A stretch of 63,564 nt of DNA, counting the filler, from Octopus bimaculoides (Eukaryota), in the NCBI RefSeq assembly GCF_001194135.2. It is 6 parts of 6 records of this genome, joined end to end, with 100 filler letters (N's around TTAATTAATTAA, not from the genome) between each part and the next. Parts side by side here need not be neighbours in the genome. Positions count along the whole stretch, not along the records: positions 50,636 to 52,590 come from NC_068992.1; 5 more parts are not named here. One strand, 5' to 3'. The translations under genes and the position numbers were made by a program. Positions 15-52,590 of the stretch are shown in pieces (positions within the stretch are counted from its first letter, which is position 1; every line of letters starts with the position of its first letter). The notes beneath the pieces are model-generated. The model was not told the origin of the DNA. It worked only from the letters and a program-made list of their open reading frames with translations, and searched no databases.

Positions 15-405
15 AGGTGTAGGCTTTGGTGTGACTTGACACACTTGCTTGTCAACCATATGGTTCCGAATTCAGTCTGGCTGCGTGGCACTTTGAGCAA
101 GTTTGATCTACTATAGATACGGGCTGGCCAAAGGCTTGTGTGTGGATTTGGTTGACGGAAACTGAAAGAAGCCCGTCGTATATATATATGTATCTAGTTA
201 TGTGTGAGTGTTTCTGTCTGTGTTTGTCGCCCCACCAACCGATGTGGGTGTGATTACGTCATCGTAACCTAGCGGTTCGACCTAAGAGACGGTTAGAATA
301 AACTGAAGGCTTACAAAAATAAGACCAGGGGTCGATTTCTACGACTGTAAGGTGGTGCTTCAGCATGGCCGCAGTCAAGTGACTGAAACATGTAAATGAA
401 TAAAG
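15..405 (+). mobile_element. tRNA-derived SINE, family A (internal TA/TG microsatellite)
   Basis: tRNA-like head, ggaaactgaaagaagcccgtcg body, internal dinucleotide tract and 3' ggggtcgat...cagcatggccgcagtc...tgactgaaac. Homologous copies occur elsewhere in the window. Confidence 0.8.
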
Positions 406-495
406 GAATAAATCTCCCCCTCCCTCTCTCTGTCTCGCTCTCTGTCTCTCTCTCTCTCGATATATATATATAAATGCATAGATATGTGATGTATG

Positions 496-531
<36 letters not shown>

Positions 532-989
532 TATATATATGTGTGTTTGTATGTATGTATGCATAGCTACACACAGAGGCGTGTATACGCAGACATCCTG
601 GTGCATACCTATACCGTAGATTTATGGTAATATTTGGAACATATGATTTTATATTCACGGCATTATTTTGTAAAAGTGTATCCCTCAGGTATCAGTGTGT
701 GGGAATATCCTTGGCTTTGGTAATGTGTTATAATATGGATTTCTTTGACTGTCTGTCTGGTTGTCTCTCTTTTAGCACACACACACACACACGCGCGCGC
801 GCACACATATATGAATATGTATATCCATATGCATGTGTGTATGTATGTGTGGAGGGTGTAAACGTACTTATATAGTTGCGTGCCTGTCTTTGCTCCGTGC
901 ATGTATATATGTATATATGTATATATGTATGCAAAGTGTTTAACCTGGCTTATCTCAGTTGAGAAACGTCATAAACTTCAGCTGCACAC

Positions 990-1037
<48 letters not shown>

Positions 1038-1719
1038 ACACACACACACATACATACACACACACACATACACACATACAGAGAGAAGAATGAGTGATGC
1101 AAAACAATTTCTTCGCAAACATTATGATATAATTAAAGTGTAATAATCGAAAATTGTCGGAAAATCACATATAGACGACTAAATGCTATCTGAATGAACC
1201 ACAAATTCAGAACTACAATTTAAGAAATATCTAAACAGGTCTTGAGTCAGACATAATTCTTTGATAGTAATAAATCAAAAGTGCATTGAATAAGTTCAGA
1301 GATAGCTACCAACTACCAACTCAAACGAAAGATGATCATGAGAATAATAATAATAATGACAATCATTCTCAATCTGTTAATTGGATAGTTCAAAGAAACG
1401 TTCACGCGCGTGTGTATGTATGTAAGTGTGTATGTATAGACTGTTTGAAGTTGTCTACAGATTTTATGTGTTAAGGAAAAGAAGATATTCAGGATTTGGG
1501 TGGAAAATATCTATTTAGTGCTTTCATCTCTTTCAAGGACTCATCGTAAATGATTTCTTATAGAATATTCATAACTTTTATATACATGTGAGTTAGTTGA
1601 AAAGAAAAGTCTGGAGTTAAATTTGTTCTCTTGTATTTTTGGAAAGAGGTAATTTTGGGAGGGGTTAAGATGTTTCTTATTTTGAATCTATAGGTGGGTG
1701 TGTGCATATATCATGTCAT

Positions 1720-1923
1720 CACGTGGCCGACCAGGCTATCTGATGTTGTTACAATGCACTTTTGCATTGCTTTAGCCTTCAAATGACGCCACCCCGCTGA
1801 CAAGGTGAGCAGGCCAAAATACCTTACTGATTAAATGTGAGACGGGCGCAATGTAAAATAAAATGTTTTGCTCGAGAACAACATGCCGTCAAGTCAGGGA
1901 ATCGAACCTACAATCTAGCGATC

Positions 1924-1925
<2 letters not shown>
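1720..1925 (-). mobile_element. tRNA-headed SINE fragment
   Basis: Reverse-strand ggttcgattccctgac...gttctcgagcaaaacattttatttt, similar to 38950-39175. Confidence 0.5.
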
Positions 1926-2007
<82 letters not shown>

Positions 2008-2798
2008 AACTGTATGCGTATGTGTTGATTTTGTGTTGGTTGTTTAAGTGTATCTTTCCAGTTATTTTAGTAACAGTAATGAGAAAATTATTAATAAGAG
2101 TATCCAATAGCAATCTGGTTTGTTTTCGTCTGGAAAATTAAGATTAAAAAAGAAAGAAGAATTTCGCATTGTTTTATAAATATGCTTTATAAACGATAAT
2201 TTTGTTATTATATTTTAAATATAGTTCCATTGCTTCTTTGATAATTTGGATCAACCCTTGGGCATTTGTAGAAACAGAAGATCTTGATAGTCCAGATGTT
2301 TGCTCAGTGGAAACATACGTAATTATTTTTGTCGCGTACGTTGTCTACGAATTTTTGTGTGTTGGCAAATGAAATTGTTGGTTTCGCCAACAAAGTTCCA
2401 AGAAGTGAAATCAGCATTGCAATGATTCCAGATGCATTAGAAAGAAGAGTTACTAGCACCGCAAGTTTGGAGAAGAGGCACGTGGCGCCTTGGTATCTGA
2501 CCGGCCTTTTGAAAGGGCTTGGAAGTCGACAGTAGCAAAGCCGGGGAGAATGTTTCTGAATGTATAGCAGAAGCTACGGTATAGCATACATGTATCACGT
2601 CTGCATGCATAAATTACAAAGACATGTATATGTATGGAAACCCTACCACACAACAGAAAAATAACACGTAAGAATACCTGTTCTTCCAGAACAGAAATGC
2701 AGCCACTCATATTCTTAGATACAAATACAAGAATGTACATAATTACGCACATAAACCAATATATGCATCCTAAACACATTCATGCACGTACACGCACG

Positions 2799-2859
<61 letters not shown>

Positions 2860-4444
2860 ATAGATATATATATAAGAAGCAAGTTTAACTGATTTAATAT
2901 AAACGTGAGATAGTTATTCGATGCAACTTTTATAGAAATATTTTCTCGGATTATGGTCTACATATCTTCCATCGAAACCATTTCAGTGCACTACATTATG
3001 TAGTTTTTCATTTTCTTGTACTTTATTTCTTTCGAGGTTGAAAGTATCGTTTCCTAAACTAAAGATCTCTCAGTAGTAAGTTCAACGTAGATGTATAATA
3101 TATAAAAGTTTTTTCAGTAAGTCACTGGTATATGTGAAAGACTTAGCTACACGAGTATTTCAATACGGCTGCATTTCAGGGAAAGTAGTAACCATCAATC
3201 TCTTCGGTATAAAAGATGGTCATATCCGCTCTTAATATGAACGGCAGCGTTAATGGTTTCTTGAACTTGTTCTGCTGAGTATGTATAAAATGTTTTAACC
3301 AAGATACATATTTTACTTTGTTCAAAGGTGAATGTCTGAACAAAGTAAACTTTAGTTCGGCGACGGAGTGTTTGAAACACTTAACTATGTGTATGCTAAC
3401 ACGTCAATACAAAATTGATACATAGTTCCATGAACGGTTGCAGTCATCCAATTATAATGCATACAAGATAATAATGATTAAGGTATTTTTTACTGTAATT
3501 ATTAAAATGCTAACAACACGTGTTATGCTTGTAGGATACTAGAATTTTAGAGTCTTGGTTCAAATCCTACTGAGGTGAACATATCCTTTCATTTCTTCAT
3601 TGTCGATAAAATAATGTATTTGTCAAACACTGAAATCAATCATTTCGATTAATCTTTTCCCATGAGAATTACTCGCTTTGTGCCCATATGAGAAACCTTT
3701 AATGAAATAGCAACAAGATGCTACTACCAAAGCAGTGTATTTTAAAAGAAATATGAACTCATTGGATAAGGTAACTTGTAGAATTTCTCGTGACGCTTTT
3801 TTTTTTTGCCCTATTTCAAATTTACAGATGTCAGTTCTTTCACCGCATTACTCGCTCCCAGATGCGAAGATGATATCAAATGCAAACAGAAGTACCAAAT
3901 TATTCTGTCGAAGTGGAAGACTCCACCCTCTCCAGATTAAACATGTTATCTCTCTAATCTTGAACTACTCCTCTTTGAATTATTCTACCTTTGCTATACT
4001 AATTATGATTCCAATGGACAGAAGAGACACAACATTCGGTTTCCTTTCATTTCTGTACCCGTTTATATTTGCCCTCCACCCCCGTTCCAATTCTTTTCAT
4101 TCAGGCTCATGCGTTCATCTTTCTGTCGCATTTTCTCGCATAATCTCAAAGACAAGCATGTTTTCTCAGTTTAAGGAAAAAAAAAATCATCAATGCGTAT
4201 TCCGGTCTGACGGATTCGTGAGAATCATAAGACATATTACATATGTCTGCAGAAGTATTGTGTTTCCTCTGTATGAAACTATTAGTAGATCAAATTGAAA
4301 TACGTTTATATTAAATGATAATTTTCTCTCAATGGATGGGTAGTTCATTTGTTTATTCCTCTAATAACAGATCACTGTATATATACCACACAAACATATG
4401 CTTAGAAAGAAAGAAGGATTGAGAGACAGATAGATGGAGACAAA

Positions 4445-4449
4445 GAAAA

Positions 4450-4493
<44 letters not shown>

Positions 4494-4502
4494 GTAGGTA
4501 GG

Positions 4503-4542
<40 letters not shown>

Positions 4543-4562
4543 CAGATATAGAAAGATAGATG

Positions 4563-4596
<34 letters not shown>

Positions 4597-4600
4597 CAGA
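4445..4600. repeat. (ATAG)n compound microsatellite
   Basis: Seen directly. Confidence 0.9.
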
Positions 4601-4838
4601 CAAAAACTAGATATACAGATACAGAGAGCGAGAAAGTGGGAAAGACGAATTCAAAATATTCGCTGAAATGCGAAGAACTTGTGGTGTTGTTGATACTACA
4701 AATCTTTATACGTTCAGAAATATATTTGCATATATGTATGGAAACGTGTACTGATGCAACTAGTCATGAAAATATGTATTCATATATATGCACATGCATA
4801 TGTACATGCATATATACGTACACATATGTACCACATAT

Positions 4839-4882
<44 letters not shown>

Positions 4883-4893
4883 ACACACACACA

Positions 4894-4938
<45 letters not shown>

Positions 4939-6689
4939 ATATATATATCCTTCTATCTCCCTATCTCTCTCTCTCTCTCTCTCTCTCNNNNNNNNNNNNN
5001 NNNNNNNNNNNNNNNNNNNNNNNNNNNNNNNNNNNNNNNNNNNNNNNNNNNNNNNNNNNNNNNNNNNNNNNNNNNNNNNNNNNNNNNNNNNNNNNNNNNN
5101 NNNNNNNNNNNNNTATATATATATATAATGGTTTGAAAGTGGGTGTGTGCCTGCATGGGTGCGTGTGCCCGCTTGTGACTGAATGAGTAGTGCTATGCGT
5201 TTGGAAAAACATTATAACAAAAGAATTCAAATCATATTTGTATTCCTTCTTTCTATACATGCATTGTTTATCATTTTATAATGCAATGTAGATGTGTATT
5301 TTCTTTAATGTTTAATACGTGTAGCCATTTGTTATAAGATAGCCTATAAACTATGGATGAAATATGAAACATCAATATAACAAATGTTTCGAGATTTCTG
5401 AAAAAAAACTAAGAATTCTATGTATTTTTAATTAGTTATGCGTTTTAGTTTTGACAGTATCTGTGTAGTTATTATGTCCAACAAATCATTTCAACAAAGG
5501 AAACATTGTTACAAACGTTTTGTTAGCATAATCAATATGAACTAAAGTATATATCTCAACTCCTGTAGCTATCTTTTCAAGGATTCAGCAACACAACGAA
5601 TATATGTATGTGGAATTATAGCTAAATGGATATTTGTTCTCGTATTTTAATGTATTATATCTTTAGGAAGTTGTTGTAAGTTATATTTTTCGTCTCTATA
5701 AAACTTTTTCTGTGGAATATTGGATAGGAGTCAAAAATTTATGTATTATAATTTTCTATTGTGAACAATGATATCGAATGAACAATAATCTCGTAAACAT
5801 TTCATAAATCATTTGTGAACAGTTGCTAGAGCAATTGTTAAAATACTTTCCCTTCTGCTGTGGCGAACTGGAGTCTTTCAAATTGTAAAATAATTTGGTA
5901 ATAGAATTTTCTTTTCCTTTTTATGTAGCTTAAGTACAGAAAGTTTCTCAGCCAAACAGAACATCACACACAAATAGTGTATATACACACATACACATGC
6001 ATATANNNNNNNNNNAAAGATATTCTGTTTTCTGTAATGCAACACCTGAGGTCATCTCATAATGTAAATAGTAAGATGTATTTGGTCAATAAAACGTCCG
6101 CAGTAAGATGAAATATGGTAATAGAGAAGCGAATATCTTACATTAAAATTAGACTTGCTTTATGCAAAAAGTAATCCACTGTAAAGTGCAATCTCTGTTA
6201 ACATGTACATGACAATCTTTCGTCTAAAGATAAGAGAGGCCATTTACTTCCAAACTACAAATCAATATACGACGTGAGATAACTGAGTGATCCACATATA
6301 TGTTGTATAGACAGCTTTCTAACAGATATGGAATAAAAGTGATAAGCAGCTGTATCAATTACAATGCATTAAGATATAGTAAGAAAATAATGATTTAAAC
6401 CTGACACTTTGTGCACAAGAGCAGACAGAGTATTTTGAAGTATTAACTTTGTGAATATATATGGTTGCCGCTGGTGGTTGAATAATACTTCACAGAGATT
6501 TTATCCGACACAAACATACTTAGCTAAGTTTATTTTATCTTATTTAAACCAACTTTTGTAAAGTTTAGAAGAAACAATAACTGAAATAAATGCATGTGAG
6601 GAAGTTATTATTAGTATCATTTACTTTCATGAAGAGTTACGTCAATCTTTATGAATTATTATAATTATTACAATAATAATTATTATTAT

Positions 6690-50636: not shown

Positions 50637-52590
50637 AGTCGATTATCAGAAAGAGAGAGTACTATCAGATCGATATCAGATCAGCGAAGTCAGATATCGG
50701 GAACAATGAGTATTCCCAGTTCAATAACGGACCGTCGAAGTGAAATATCTGAAAGAGCGAGTATTCCCAGTACAATGACGGATCAACGAAGTCGATTATC
50801 AGAAAGAGAGAGTACTATCAGATCGATATCAGATGGGCGAAGTCAGATATCGGGAACAATGAGTATTCCCAGTTCAATAACGGACCGTCGGAGTGAAGTA
50901 TCTGAAAGAGAGAGTATTCCCAGTACAATGACGGATCAACCAAGTCGATTATCAGAAAGAGAGAGTACTATCAGATCGATATCAGATCAGCGAAGTCAGA
51001 TATCGGGAACAACGAGTATTCCAAGTTCAACAAGTGTCCGTTGGAGTGACGTATCTGAAAGAGAGAGTATTCCCAGTACAATAGCAGATCAAAGAAGTCG
51101 ATTATCAGAAAGAGAGAGTACTATCAGATCAATATCAGATGAGCGAAGTCAGATATCGGGAAAAATGAGTATTCCCAGTTCAATGCACCATCAGAGTGAA
51201 ATATATAGAAGGGAGAGTACTCCGGGTACAATATCAGACGAACGAGGTCGATTATCAGAAAGAGAGAGTACTATCAGATCGGCATCAGTTCAAGAAAGTA
51301 AGATTTCTGAACAAATAAGTCTCCCCAGTTCAAGAACCGACCGGTGGAGTGAAATATCTGAAAGGGAGACGATACCCAGTACAATAATTGACCAAGGAAG
51401 TCGTTTATCAGAAAGAGAGAGTACTATCAGATCGATATCAGATGAACGAAGTCAGATATCGGGAACAATGAGTATTCCGAGTTCAATAAGAGACCGGTCG
51501 AGTGTGGTGTCTGAAAGGGCGGGTATAGTAAGTTTTATGCCTGACCAACGAAGTCGATTTTCAGAAAGAGAAATTACTGTCAGGTCGATAGCAGATCAAC
51601 GAAGTCAAATATCTGGAAGGTTGCATATTCCCAGTTCAGTATCAGGGTGGCAAAGTGAAGCAACTGAAAGAGAGAGTATTCCCAGTGCAATAGCAGACCA
51701 ACGAAGTCGATTATCAGAAAGAGGGGATACTATCAGATGGATATCAGATGAACGCATTCAAATACCTGAAAGACCGAGTATCTCTAGTTCAGTAACTGAA
51801 AGGAGGAGTGAAGTATATGAAAGAGCCCGTATTGCAAGTACGATGCCGGACCAACAAAGTCGATTATCAGAAAGAGAGAGTATTATTAGATCGATATACG
51901 ATCAGCGAAGTCGGATATCTAGAGCAATGAGTATTCCAAGTTCAATAAGTGATAAGCAGAGTGAAATATTTGAAAGGGCGAGTATTCCCAGTACAATAGA
52001 AGACCAAAAAAGTCGATTATCAGAAAGGGAAAGTTCAATCAGTTACATATCAGGTCCACGAAGTCAGATATCGGGAACAATGAGTATTCCCAGTTCAATA
52101 ACGGACCGTCGGAGTGAAATATCTGAAAGAGAGAGTATACCCAGTACAATCGCAGATCAACGAAGTCGATTATCAGAAAAAGAGAGTACTATCAGATCGA
52201 TATCAGATGGGCGAAGTCAGATATCGGGAACAATGAGTATTCCCAGCTCAATAACGGACCGTCGGACAGAAATGTCTGAAAGAGAAAGTATTCCCAGTAC
52301 AATGACGGGTCAACGAAGTCGATTATCAGAAAGAGAGAGTACTATCAGATCGATATCAGATGGGCGAAGTCAGATATCGGGAACAATGAGTATTCCCAGC
52401 TCAATAACGGACCGTCGGACCGAAATGTCTGAAAGAGAAAGTATTCCCAGTACAATGACGGATCAACGAAGTCGATTATCAGAAAGAGAGAGTACTATCA
52501 GATCGATATCAGATGGGCGAAGTCAGATATCGGGAACAATGAGTATTCCCAGTTCAATAACGGACCGTCGGAGTGAAGTATCTGAAAGAG
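50637..52590 (+). CDS. Partial coding exon of a Ser/Arg/Glu/Ile-rich tandem-repeat (probably disordered) protein; 51-aa unit made of three 17-aa subunits, 12 full units plus a partial 13th
   Basis: One open frame of 651 codons runs gap to gap. The other five frames hit stops in the repeat unit I translated. Unit: SRLSERESTIRSISDGR/SQISGTMSIPSSITDRR/SEVSERESIPSTMTDQR. Heavily diverged central units keep the frame, and the only indel seen is an in-frame 3-nt loss (SSMHHQ). Start, stop and splice sites are hidden in gaps. Confidence 0.8.

What the first reader, a model, noticed from the sequence alone, without database searches (positions are those of the whole stretch)
50637..52590. Unrecognised 17-aa x3 higher-order repeat protein dense in Arg-directed Ser/Thr motifs
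Seen: 651 open codons with a 51-aa unit of three 17-aa subunits; most subunits carry R-S-x-x-S, and RES(T/I) and IPS(S/T) recur. Diverged units avoid stops and frameshifts, and the only indel is 3 nt, which argues for selection on the protein rather than satellite DNA. I do not recognise the family; it is not a reflectin. Inference: an intrinsically disordered phospho-tunable spacer or structural protein, loosely comparable in composition to the S/R/E repeats of Drosophila Futsch. It is the best candidate here for a lineage-specific novelty.
Basis: partly seen in the sequence, partly recalled or inferred. Interest (0 to 1): 0.8.

Follow-up and report, generated by a model that had tools for sequence, protein, structure and literature searches.

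The report
Orphan serine-rich tandem-repeat coding exon
This piece is a fragment of a much longer array of 51-amino-acid repeats that is kept open and conserved at the protein level, is transcribed in a few RNA samples, and has no recognisable relative outside one small group of species, so it is probably part of an unannotated giant low-complexity protein whose function is still unknown.

Summary
The piece has 12.8 tandem 153-nt units, each made of three 51-nt subunits. One + frame is open for 651 codons; the other five frames carry 24-53 stops.

The evidence favours coding sequence over satellite DNA:
- No stop among 135 unit-to-unit changes, where about 7 were expected.
- Variants among the canonical copies in four species are 24 synonymous, 18 replacement and 0 stop (P~1e-5).
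- A 200-codon orthologue in two sister species is open, with dN/dS about 0.65.
- The canonical unit stands at roughly 25-150 copies, so the piece samples a much larger array.
- Transcriptome-sized runs of three species hold the array and its flanks at uneven depth. At least 14 other indexed RNA runs hold none of its words, and three deep runs gave no reads.

Pfam, PDB, Rfam and 1.84 billion protein representatives give no true relative. The only hits are a 13-residue motif shared with bacterial BspA-type LRR proteins.

The "Arg-directed kinase motif" reading is not supported: R-x-x-S/T is not enriched, while S/T-x-x-D/E is. Disorder is plausible but unproven. Stretch 51192-51330, next to the only indel at 51184/51185, is not seen in any DNA run of the same species label that was laid on it.

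The parts
50636..52590 (+). Fragment of a tandem array: 12.8 units of 153 nt, each made of three 51-nt subunits. Both ends of the piece lie inside canonical units, so the array runs on beyond the piece.
   Evidence: The subunits of the consensus are 63-75% identical to one another at DNA level.
50637..52589 (+). Open reading frame of 651 codons, with no start and no stop inside the piece. Composition: S 26%, R 15%, I 13%, E 10%, no Cys.
50637..51095 (+). Units 1-3, canonical (1-9% from the consensus).
   Evidence: Word depth is about 25-90 times that of the single-copy stretch in DNA runs.
51096..52010 (+). Units 4-9, diverged (12-23% from the consensus) and still open in frame.
52011..52589 (+). 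Units 10-13, near-canonical. Unit 13 is cut by the end of the piece.
51182..51190 (+). Site of the only indel, a 3-nt deletion in unit 4 placed at 51184/51185. It coincides with the point where public reads leave the piece.
   Evidence: best gap position. Loose ends behind 51184.
51192..51330 (+). Stretch not found in any DNA run of the same species label that was laid on it. The part from about 51250 onward nevertheless has an orthologue in the sister species.
   Evidence: Zero depth. Orthologous contigs of 466-487 nt cover 51243-51723.
51449..52088 (+). Single-copy stretch of diverged units. It is confirmed with 0 differences in three DNA runs and is present in one transcriptome-sized run at depth 27.

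Best explanation
The piece is an internal fragment of one very large protein-coding tandem-repeat region. The canonical 51-aa unit stands at tens to about 150 copies, alongside several kilobases of diverged units. The region belongs to a gene restricted to a small group of related species, and its RNA is found in only a few samples. Shown: the frame is kept open; the amino-acid sequence of the canonical unit is conserved within and between species; the array and its unique flanks are present in transcriptome-sized runs; and no relative is known. Inferred: the repeat does not fold into a globular domain. It would form a long, strongly hydrated, charge-balanced chain (30% charged residues, net charge about 0, 33% Ser+Thr, a Pro every 17-25 residues, no Cys). 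Hydrophobic residues recur at 3/4/7 spacing, which could give transient amphipathic helices. Such a chain would act through bulk properties such as length, hydration and multivalent weak contacts, with its many Ser/Thr as sites for dense modification. The enriched context is acidophilic (CK2-like S/T-x-x-D/E) rather than Arg-directed; O-glycosylation is an alternative. Because expression is restricted to a few samples and the build resembles mucin, sericin and filaggrin genes, I lean towards a product of a specialised tissue or gland, a secreted matrix, coat or glue component (about 40% of the probability given to this explanation). An intracellular phospho-regulated scaffold is less likely (about 25%). 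The remainder is undecided.
For: Repeat anatomy and open frame. Stop avoidance: 0 stops seen against 7.1 expected among 135 distinct changes, P~7e-4. Variants among canonical copies in the source species: 18 synonymous, 17 replacement, 0 stop, codon positions 9/8/18, and no indel variants. Variants of the canonical unit in three related species: 11 synonymous, 4 conservative replacements, codon positions 2/2/11, no indels. The union is 24 synonymous against 18 replacement, where 25% synonymous is expected (P=1e-5), and 20 against 16 without CpG transitions (P=1e-4). This gives dN/dS of about 0.25. Orthologue of 51252-51851 in the sister species: 64 substitutions, no stop in frame but 10 and 17 stops in the other two frames. 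A -1 indel at 51796 and a +1 after 51802 cancel, and dN/dS is about 0.65. Transcription: run X12 (51 Mb of contigs, far too little for a genome at that depth) holds the single-copy stretch at depth 27. It also holds an 803-nt contig at depth 7.7 that runs from the array into a unique 3' flank, still in frame (MSIP|SVEKLHTVS). In another species the same contigs lie at a flat 49-57 in DNA (X17), but at 90-461 in X16 and 116-298 in X18, both about 62-65 Mb of contigs. Restricted expression: 14 other indexed RNA runs of the species hold 0.00 of the words, and three deep RNA runs gave 0 reads out of about 12 million each. Copy number: canonical word depth is 25-94 times the single-copy depth in X1, X2 and X4, and up to about 150 times in X17. 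No relatives. Physical character.
Against: No start, stop, signal peptide, intron or gene model is visible, because the flanks could not be read. The RNA or DNA nature of X12, X16, X18 and X25 is inferred from assembly size and uneven depth, not from the record, and no stranded reads exist. The diverged units within the piece are close to neutral (dN/dS about 0.78; 40 synonymous, 93 replacement). Part of the piece (51192-51330) is not confirmed in reads of the same species label. No peptide evidence exists. The AlphaFold2 result rests on a 4-row alignment of paralogous units and cannot prove disorder. The secreted-versus-intracellular choice and the kind of modification are inference from composition and analogy only.
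Confidence: 0.7

Rival explanations
1. It is a transcribed non-coding tandem repeat (a small satellite or macrosatellite). Its unit happens to be open in one frame, and the RNA seen is germline or embryonic repeat transcription.
For: High copy number and near-identical units, with the canonical-to-unique depth ratio in RNA similar to that in DNA. A 153-nt unit of this base composition has a non-trivial chance of being open in one of six frames. Within-piece divergence is close to neutral. Most RNA runs show nothing.
Against: Synonymous changes are in excess, at 24 against 18 where 25% is expected (P=1e-5). No stop occurs among 135 + 64 + 42 changes. All length differences seen preserve the frame: the 3-nt deletion, the compensating -1/+1 pair, and a net 252-nt difference between species. 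The frame stays open across both array edges into the flanks.
Confidence: 0.13
2. It is a folded solenoid related to bacterial and protist BspA-type leucine-rich repeats. The similarity comes through the shared motif (N/S)Q(L/I)SGT(L/M)(T/S)IPSS(V/I)T.
For: The only database hits, P0001, P0002, P0003 and P0005, are BspA/LRR_5-type surface proteins. They match at SQISGTMSIPSSIT with E-values from 1e-12 to 4e-4.
Against: The match covers only profile positions 19-31 (up to 9-32) of the 51-aa unit, and its score is inflated because both partners are repeats. Pfam LRR_5 does not match the protein even at E<=10. The rest of the unit is Ser/Arg/Glu-rich and lacks the LRR hydrophobic core. AlphaFold2 gives no solenoid (pLDDT 44.8).
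Confidence: 0.03
3. It is an intracellular, kinase-tunable disordered spacer of the Futsch/MAP1B or SR-protein kind.
For: The protein is rich in Ser, Arg and Glu. RS dipeptides number 35 against 24.5 +/- 4.0 in shuffles, and S/T-x-x-D/E 50 against 32.3. The composition is near the disordered side of the charge-hydropathy line, and the model has low confidence.
Against: R-x-x-S/T is not enriched and RRxS/T is depleted. There are no runs of consecutive RS dipeptides and no similarity to any MAP1B, Futsch or SR protein. Expression limited to a few runs fits a ubiquitous nuclear or cytoskeletal scaffold less well.
Confidence: 0.2
4. The piece is partly an assembly artefact. A collapsed or mis-joined consensus of a longer array would mean that the unit order and the single indel are not real.
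For: The share of sampled words is only 0.37-0.54 in every run of the species. Stretch 51192-51330 has no support in any of the runs laid on it, and reads leave the piece exactly at the indel site, 51184. Both ends of the piece lie in canonical units.
Against: Stretch 51449-52088 is confirmed base for base in three runs. The unsupported stretch has a clear orthologue (89% identity) in two sister species, so it is real sequence somewhere in this lineage. This rival concerns the arrangement of the piece, not the coding nature of the repeat.
Confidence: 0.35

Closest known systems
Mucin-type VNTR exons (for example the central PTS exons of gel-forming mucins)
   Same: One very large coding tandem array of near-identical units flanked by diverged units. 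It is rich in Ser/Thr, lacks Cys, has tissue-restricted expression, and is hard to assemble and annotate.
   Different: Ser+Thr+Pro is about 37%, with only 4% Pro and 30% charged residues, which is unusual for PTS domains. No signal peptide or Cys-rich flanking domains could be examined, and there is no sequence similarity.
Sericin (silk glue; 38-aa Ser-rich repeats in one large exon) and filaggrin-type S/R-rich repeat precursors
   Same: Hydrophilic Ser-rich (and, in filaggrin, Arg-rich) units repeated tens of times in a single large exon. The products come from specialised tissues and act through bulk physical properties.
   Different: No homology. This unit has 13% Ile at regular 3/4/7 spacing, a three-part internal substructure, and balanced charge.
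Futsch/MAP1B and SR-related scaffolds (SRRM2-like)
   Same: Long low-complexity S/R/E-rich repeat regions, presumed to be disordered and phosphorylated.
   Different: No sequence similarity was found, there are no RS runs and no KSP-type motifs. Expression appears restricted rather than broad.
BspA-type leucine-rich repeat surface proteins (Pfam LRR_5, PF13306)
   Same: They share a 13-14-residue motif, (S/N)Q(I/L)SGT(M/L)(S/T)IPSS(I/V)T, once per repeat.
   Different: The remainder of the unit, the period (51 aa), the composition and the Pfam model do not match. I read this as a chance or convergent motif.

Membership tests
BspA-type LRR (Pfam PF13306, LRR_5) | The protein matches the family profile at or above the gathering score. 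| tested here: not met
   The Pfam scan at E<=10 lists no LRR family.
BspA-type LRR (Pfam PF13306, LRR_5) | Similarity extends over whole repeats, including the hydrophobic core positions, and the protein folds as a solenoid. | tested here: not met
   Hits align only profile positions 19-31 (at most 9-32) of 51. The AlphaFold2 model has pLDDT 44.8 and no strands.
Satellite DNA (non-coding tandem repeat) | No reading-frame conservation: substitutions are spread evenly over codon positions, and stops and frameshifts accumulate. | tested here: not met
   There are 0 stops against 7.1 expected. Synonymous changes are in excess at 24 against 18, P=1e-5. The orthologue is open, and all length differences seen are frame-preserving.
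Satellite DNA (non-coding tandem repeat) | Very high copy number, from thousands of units to a percentage of the genome. | tested here: not met
   The ratio of canonical word depth to single-copy depth is about 25-150.
SR / RS-domain proteins | Runs of consecutive Arg-Ser dipeptides, usually together with an RRM. | tested here: not met
   RS dipeptides are only mildly enriched (35 against 24.5) and are isolated rather than in runs. Pfam finds no RRM within the piece. The flanks could not be read.
Mucins (PTS tandem-repeat domain) | A large tandem-repeat exon dominated by Pro, Thr and Ser. | tested here: inconclusive
   The large in-frame array is present. S+T+P is about 37%, but Pro is only 4% and 30% of residues are charged.
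Mucins (PTS tandem-repeat domain) | A signal peptide, Cys-rich flanking domains and heavy O-glycosylation. | not testable with these tools
   Only 30 nt of each flank could be read, as loose ends.
Futsch / MAP1B | Sequence homology to MAP1B N- and C-terminal domains, and KSP-type repeats. | tested here: not met
   No such hit appears in Pfam, in the 5.8-billion protein collection or in the 1.84-billion representatives search. The repeat contains no KSP motif.
Reflectin | Met/Tyr/Asn-rich reflectin motifs (Pfam reflectin family). | tested here: not met
   There is no Pfam hit. The composition is S/R/I/E with 0.6% Tyr.

The most novel reading that the evidence does not exclude
An unannotated, lineage-restricted giant protein of several thousand residues, made almost wholly of this 51-aa unit. 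It would be a major product of one specialised tissue or secretion in this group of animals, and a new sequence class of hydrated polyampholyte structural material. The array is older than the split of the species compared, because the same unit variants are shared across species.
Probability: 0.4. Interest if true: 0.55.

Novelty: new member of a known kind. Interest (0 to 1): 0.4.

Why it matters
If the reading is right, a very large, abundantly transcribed gene is missing from protein collections, or collapsed in them, because short-read assembly breaks on its repeats. Taxon-restricted repeat proteins of this build, such as mucins, silks, glues and cornified-envelope precursors, often underlie lineage-specific tissues and materials. 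This one would give a defined candidate, with ready tryptic peptides and probes, for a specialised tissue of these animals. It is also a clean case in which protein-level selection can be shown on a tandem array from public reads alone. In itself it is not a new principle.

Tried and rejected
1. The Pfam scan gave only sub-threshold repeat noise (KOW6_SPT5, Ploopntkinase3), which I rejected.
2. The PDB sequence search gave only weak repeat-on-repeat matches (protein A, YopM, E>=0.01), also rejected.
3. The Rfam scan found nothing.
4. The search for homologous proteins and the exhaustive HMMER search with the unit profile returned only BspA-type LRR proteins that share one 13-aa motif. A fifth hit, P0004, is an unrelated repetitive protein.
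5. An attempt to build a pseudo-alignment from overlapping six-unit windows failed, because the aligner restored the true offsets. I replaced it with four non-overlapping three-unit blocks.
6. AlphaFold2 on that alignment gave no confident fold, so no fold search was run.
8. An exact-word scan of metagenome contigs found nothing.
9. Four literature searches found no description of this repeat.
10. RNA editing as the cause of the differences between the RNA-run contig and DNA (T>C, T>G, A>C) was rejected. None is A>G, and one is the ancestral state in the sister species.
11. Walking out into the flanks was not possible, because only 30 nt of each loose end are given.

Full report
**What is there.** The piece 50636-52590 is a head-to-tail array of 12.8 units of 153 nt (81% matches, no indels by TRF). 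Each unit is itself three diverged 51-nt subunits (61% matches). The frame that starts at 50637 on the + strand is open for all 651 codons. The other five frames carry 24-53 stops. The translated consensus unit is SRLSERESTIRSISDxR-SQISGTMSIPSSITDRR-SExSERESIPSTxxDQR.
- Composition: Ser 26%, Arg 15%, Ile 13%, Glu 10%, Thr 7%, Pro 4%, no Cys.
- Units 1-3 and 10-13 are 1-9% from the consensus; units 4-9 are 12-23% from it.
- One 3-nt deletion sits at 51184/51185.

**Is the open frame more than chance?** A repeat whose unit is open stays open until mutations break it, so the test concerns the mutations.
- Within the piece there are 135 distinct changes from the consensus. With the observed substitution spectrum, 5.3% of random changes would create a stop, so 7.1 stops were expected. 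None is present (P~7e-4).
- These within-piece changes are otherwise close to neutral: 40 synonymous against 93 replacement, where 24% and 71% are expected. This gives dN/dS of about 0.78.
- The stronger signal comes from the many canonical copies elsewhere in the genome. Reads and contigs of the same species laid on the last canonical units show 35 variant positions: 18 synonymous, 17 replacement, no stop, no indel, with codon positions 9/8/18.
- The same unit in three related species shows 15 variants: 11 synonymous and 4 conservative replacements, with codon positions 2/2/11 and no indels.
- The union is 24 synonymous against 18 replacement, where 25% synonymous is expected (P=1e-5). It is 20 against 16 after removing CpG transitions (P=1e-4). 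This gives dN/dS of about 0.25.
- Several variants are shared between species, so the variant units are older than the species split.

**Orthologue.** Two sister species (coded B and C, which carry identical contigs) have contigs orthologous to the diverged middle of the piece at about 89% identity. I rebuilt 600 nt (51252-51851) from the difference tables.
- It has 64 substitutions and no stop in frame, against 10 and 17 stops in the other two frames.
- A 1-nt deletion at 51796 is cancelled by a 1-nt insertion after 51802.
- dN/dS is about 0.65.
- A length difference between the species at 51144-51400 is 255 nt skipped with 3 nt inserted, a net 252 nt, which is in frame.
- The assignment of five differences in 51687-51716 to the orthologous contig is my inference from contig depths and from the stated total of 16.

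**Size of the array.** In DNA runs of the source species the single-copy stretch 51449-52088 has depth 53.5, 12.9 and 45.9 (X1, X2, X4). Words of the canonical units reach 340-5000, a ratio of about 25-94. In species C the ratio reaches about 150. Several single-copy contigs of 0.5-3.7 kb made of diverged units, or of flank plus array edge, exist in the sister species. The piece is therefore a small sample of a region that probably spans well over 10 kb. If it is one frame, it would encode several thousand residues.

**Edges.**
- One contig enters the array from the 5' side as ...TTAACAGACCAAGTAAGTCAACCATCTGTT|GAAAGAGAG. In frame this reads LTDQVSQPSV|ERESTIR, a degenerate unit with no stop.
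- One contig leaves on the 3' side as ...ATGAGTATTCC|ATCTGTTGAAAAGCTTCACACTGTTTCATT. In frame this reads MSIP|SVEKLHTVS, again with no stop.
- Both edges contain CCATCTGTTGAAA (P-S-V-E). This is what one expects if the array grew by duplication inside an already open sequence.
- A third junction appears in four Hi-C reads: behind 52536, TGTTGGAAGCGTGTGTAAGTAG. It contains a GTAAGT donor-like site. I could not follow it further.

**Transcription.** Run names are coded and the RNA label of the older runs is a guess by the tool, so I argue from the data.
- X12 (source species) has only 51 Mb of contigs, yet it holds the single-copy stretch at depth 27, the 3' flank contig (803 nt) at 7.7, and canonical words at 2000-4000. 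A genomic library with single-copy depth 27 would assemble gigabases, as the DNA runs do.
- In species C the same set of contigs lies at a flat 49-57 in the DNA run X17. It lies at 90-461 in X16 and 116-298 in X18, each with about 62-65 Mb of contigs.
- A fourth species (D) has matching contigs in a 9-Mb assembly.
- Fourteen other indexed RNA runs of the source species hold none of the sampled words. Three deep 2026 RNA-seq runs gave 0 reads from about 12 million reads each.
- Expression is therefore real but confined to few samples. The strand could not be determined.
- Differences between the X12 contig and DNA are T>C, T>G and A>C, so there is no sign of A-to-I editing.

**Relatives.**
- Pfam gives nothing at threshold.
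- PDB sequences give only weak repeat noise.
- Rfam gives nothing.
- The word-indexed search of 5.8 billion proteins gives one hit.
- The exhaustive HMMER search of 1.84 billion representatives with the unit profile gives five hits. Four are bacterial-type BspA/LRR_5 surface proteins. They match only the motif SQISGTMSIPSSIT, against NQLSGTLTIPSSVT in those proteins, repeated many times. The fifth is unrelated.
- I read the motif match as coincidence or convergence, not homology.
Because the names are coded, this remains an inference.

**Physical character.**
- The fraction of charged residues is 0.30, the net charge per residue about 0, GRAVY -0.91, and the pI 9.05.
- Mean hydropathy is 0.399 against a charge-hydropathy boundary of 0.414, just on the disordered side.
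- Hydrophobic residues recur at spacings of 7, 3, 7, 4, 2, 4, 7, 6, 4, which is heptad-like. AlphaFold2, with a 4-row alignment of paralogous three-unit blocks, draws low-confidence helices and no fold (pLDDT 44.8, pTM 0.20).
- R-x-x-S/T is not enriched (26 against 31.4 +/- 4.3) and RRxS/T is depleted (1 against 4.6).
- S/T-x-x-D/E is enriched (50 against 32.3) and RS dipeptides mildly so (35 against 24.5).
- The 'Arg-directed' label is therefore not supported. If the protein is phosphorylated, the sequence context favours acidophilic kinases.

**Caveat on the piece itself.** No run of the species holds more than 54% of the sampled words. Stretch 51192-51330 has no support at 85-95% likeness in X1, X2, X3, X4, X6, X10, X11, X12 or the Hi-C reads X23 and X24. 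X9 also lacks most of it and covers only about 51318-51371, at a depth that looks multi-copy. Reads reaching 51184 continue with canonical sequence. That point is exactly where the only indel lies. Because the sister species have an orthologue from about 51250 onward, the sequence is real in this lineage. Its place in this piece may still reflect a different haplotype or an assembly join.

**Verdict.** This is a real, protein-constrained tandem-repeat coding region of an orphan gene, expressed in few samples. It belongs to the well-known kind of giant low-complexity repeat proteins but has no known sequence relatives. Its function is inferred only from composition and gene build. I lean towards an extended, heavily modified structural or matrix chain from a specialised tissue.

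Noticed in passing
window 50688-50729 and the same phase in every unit (SQISGTMSIPSSIT): A 13-14-residue motif is nearly identical to the NQLSGTLTIPSSVT motif of bacterial BspA-type LRR_5 surface proteins. It produces the only database hits (E down to 1e-12), and nothing else in the unit matches.
   Followed up: yes
window 51184-51330: Public reads of the same species label leave the piece at 51184, exactly at the 3-nt deletion, and nothing matches 51192-51330. Sister species nevertheless carry an orthologue from about 51250 onward. This could be a haplotype difference or an assembly join.
   Followed up: partly
array edges: loose ends before 50649/50802/52482 and behind 52396/52549: The 5' and 3' junctions of the array with unique sequence share CCATCTGTTGAAA (P-S-V-E), and both are open in the repeat's frame. 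This suggests the array arose by duplication inside an existing open sequence.
   Followed up: partly
behind window 52536 (run X23, 4 reads): A different junction, TGTTGGAAGCGTGTGTAAGTAGCAAAAATA, contains a consensus-like splice donor (GTAAGT) five codons after the repeat. It could be an exon end or another array edge.
   Followed up: no
runs X23 and X24 on window 52440-52510 and 51375-51413: Loose ends and inverted joints contain GATCGATC palindromes (GGTTCGTCCATCGATCGATGGACGAACC). This is the signature of Hi-C ligation junctions at the GATC sites of the repeat, not a genomic rearrangement.
   Followed up: partly
window 51144-51400 against species C (X16, X17): Species C skips 255 nt and has 3 other letters (AAC) in their place, a net 252-nt in-frame length difference between species inside the diverged units.
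   Followed up: partly
window 52317-52469: The majority form of the canonical unit in species C differs from the source species at only 3 of 153 positions, while the diverged single-copy units differ by about 11%. Several minority unit variants are shared across species.
   Followed up: partly
window 51783, 51788, 51954: The contig of the transcriptome-sized run X12 differs from DNA runs at three positions (T>C, T>G, A>C). None is A>G, and 51783 C is the state in the sister species, so these are polymorphisms rather than RNA editing.
   Followed up: yes
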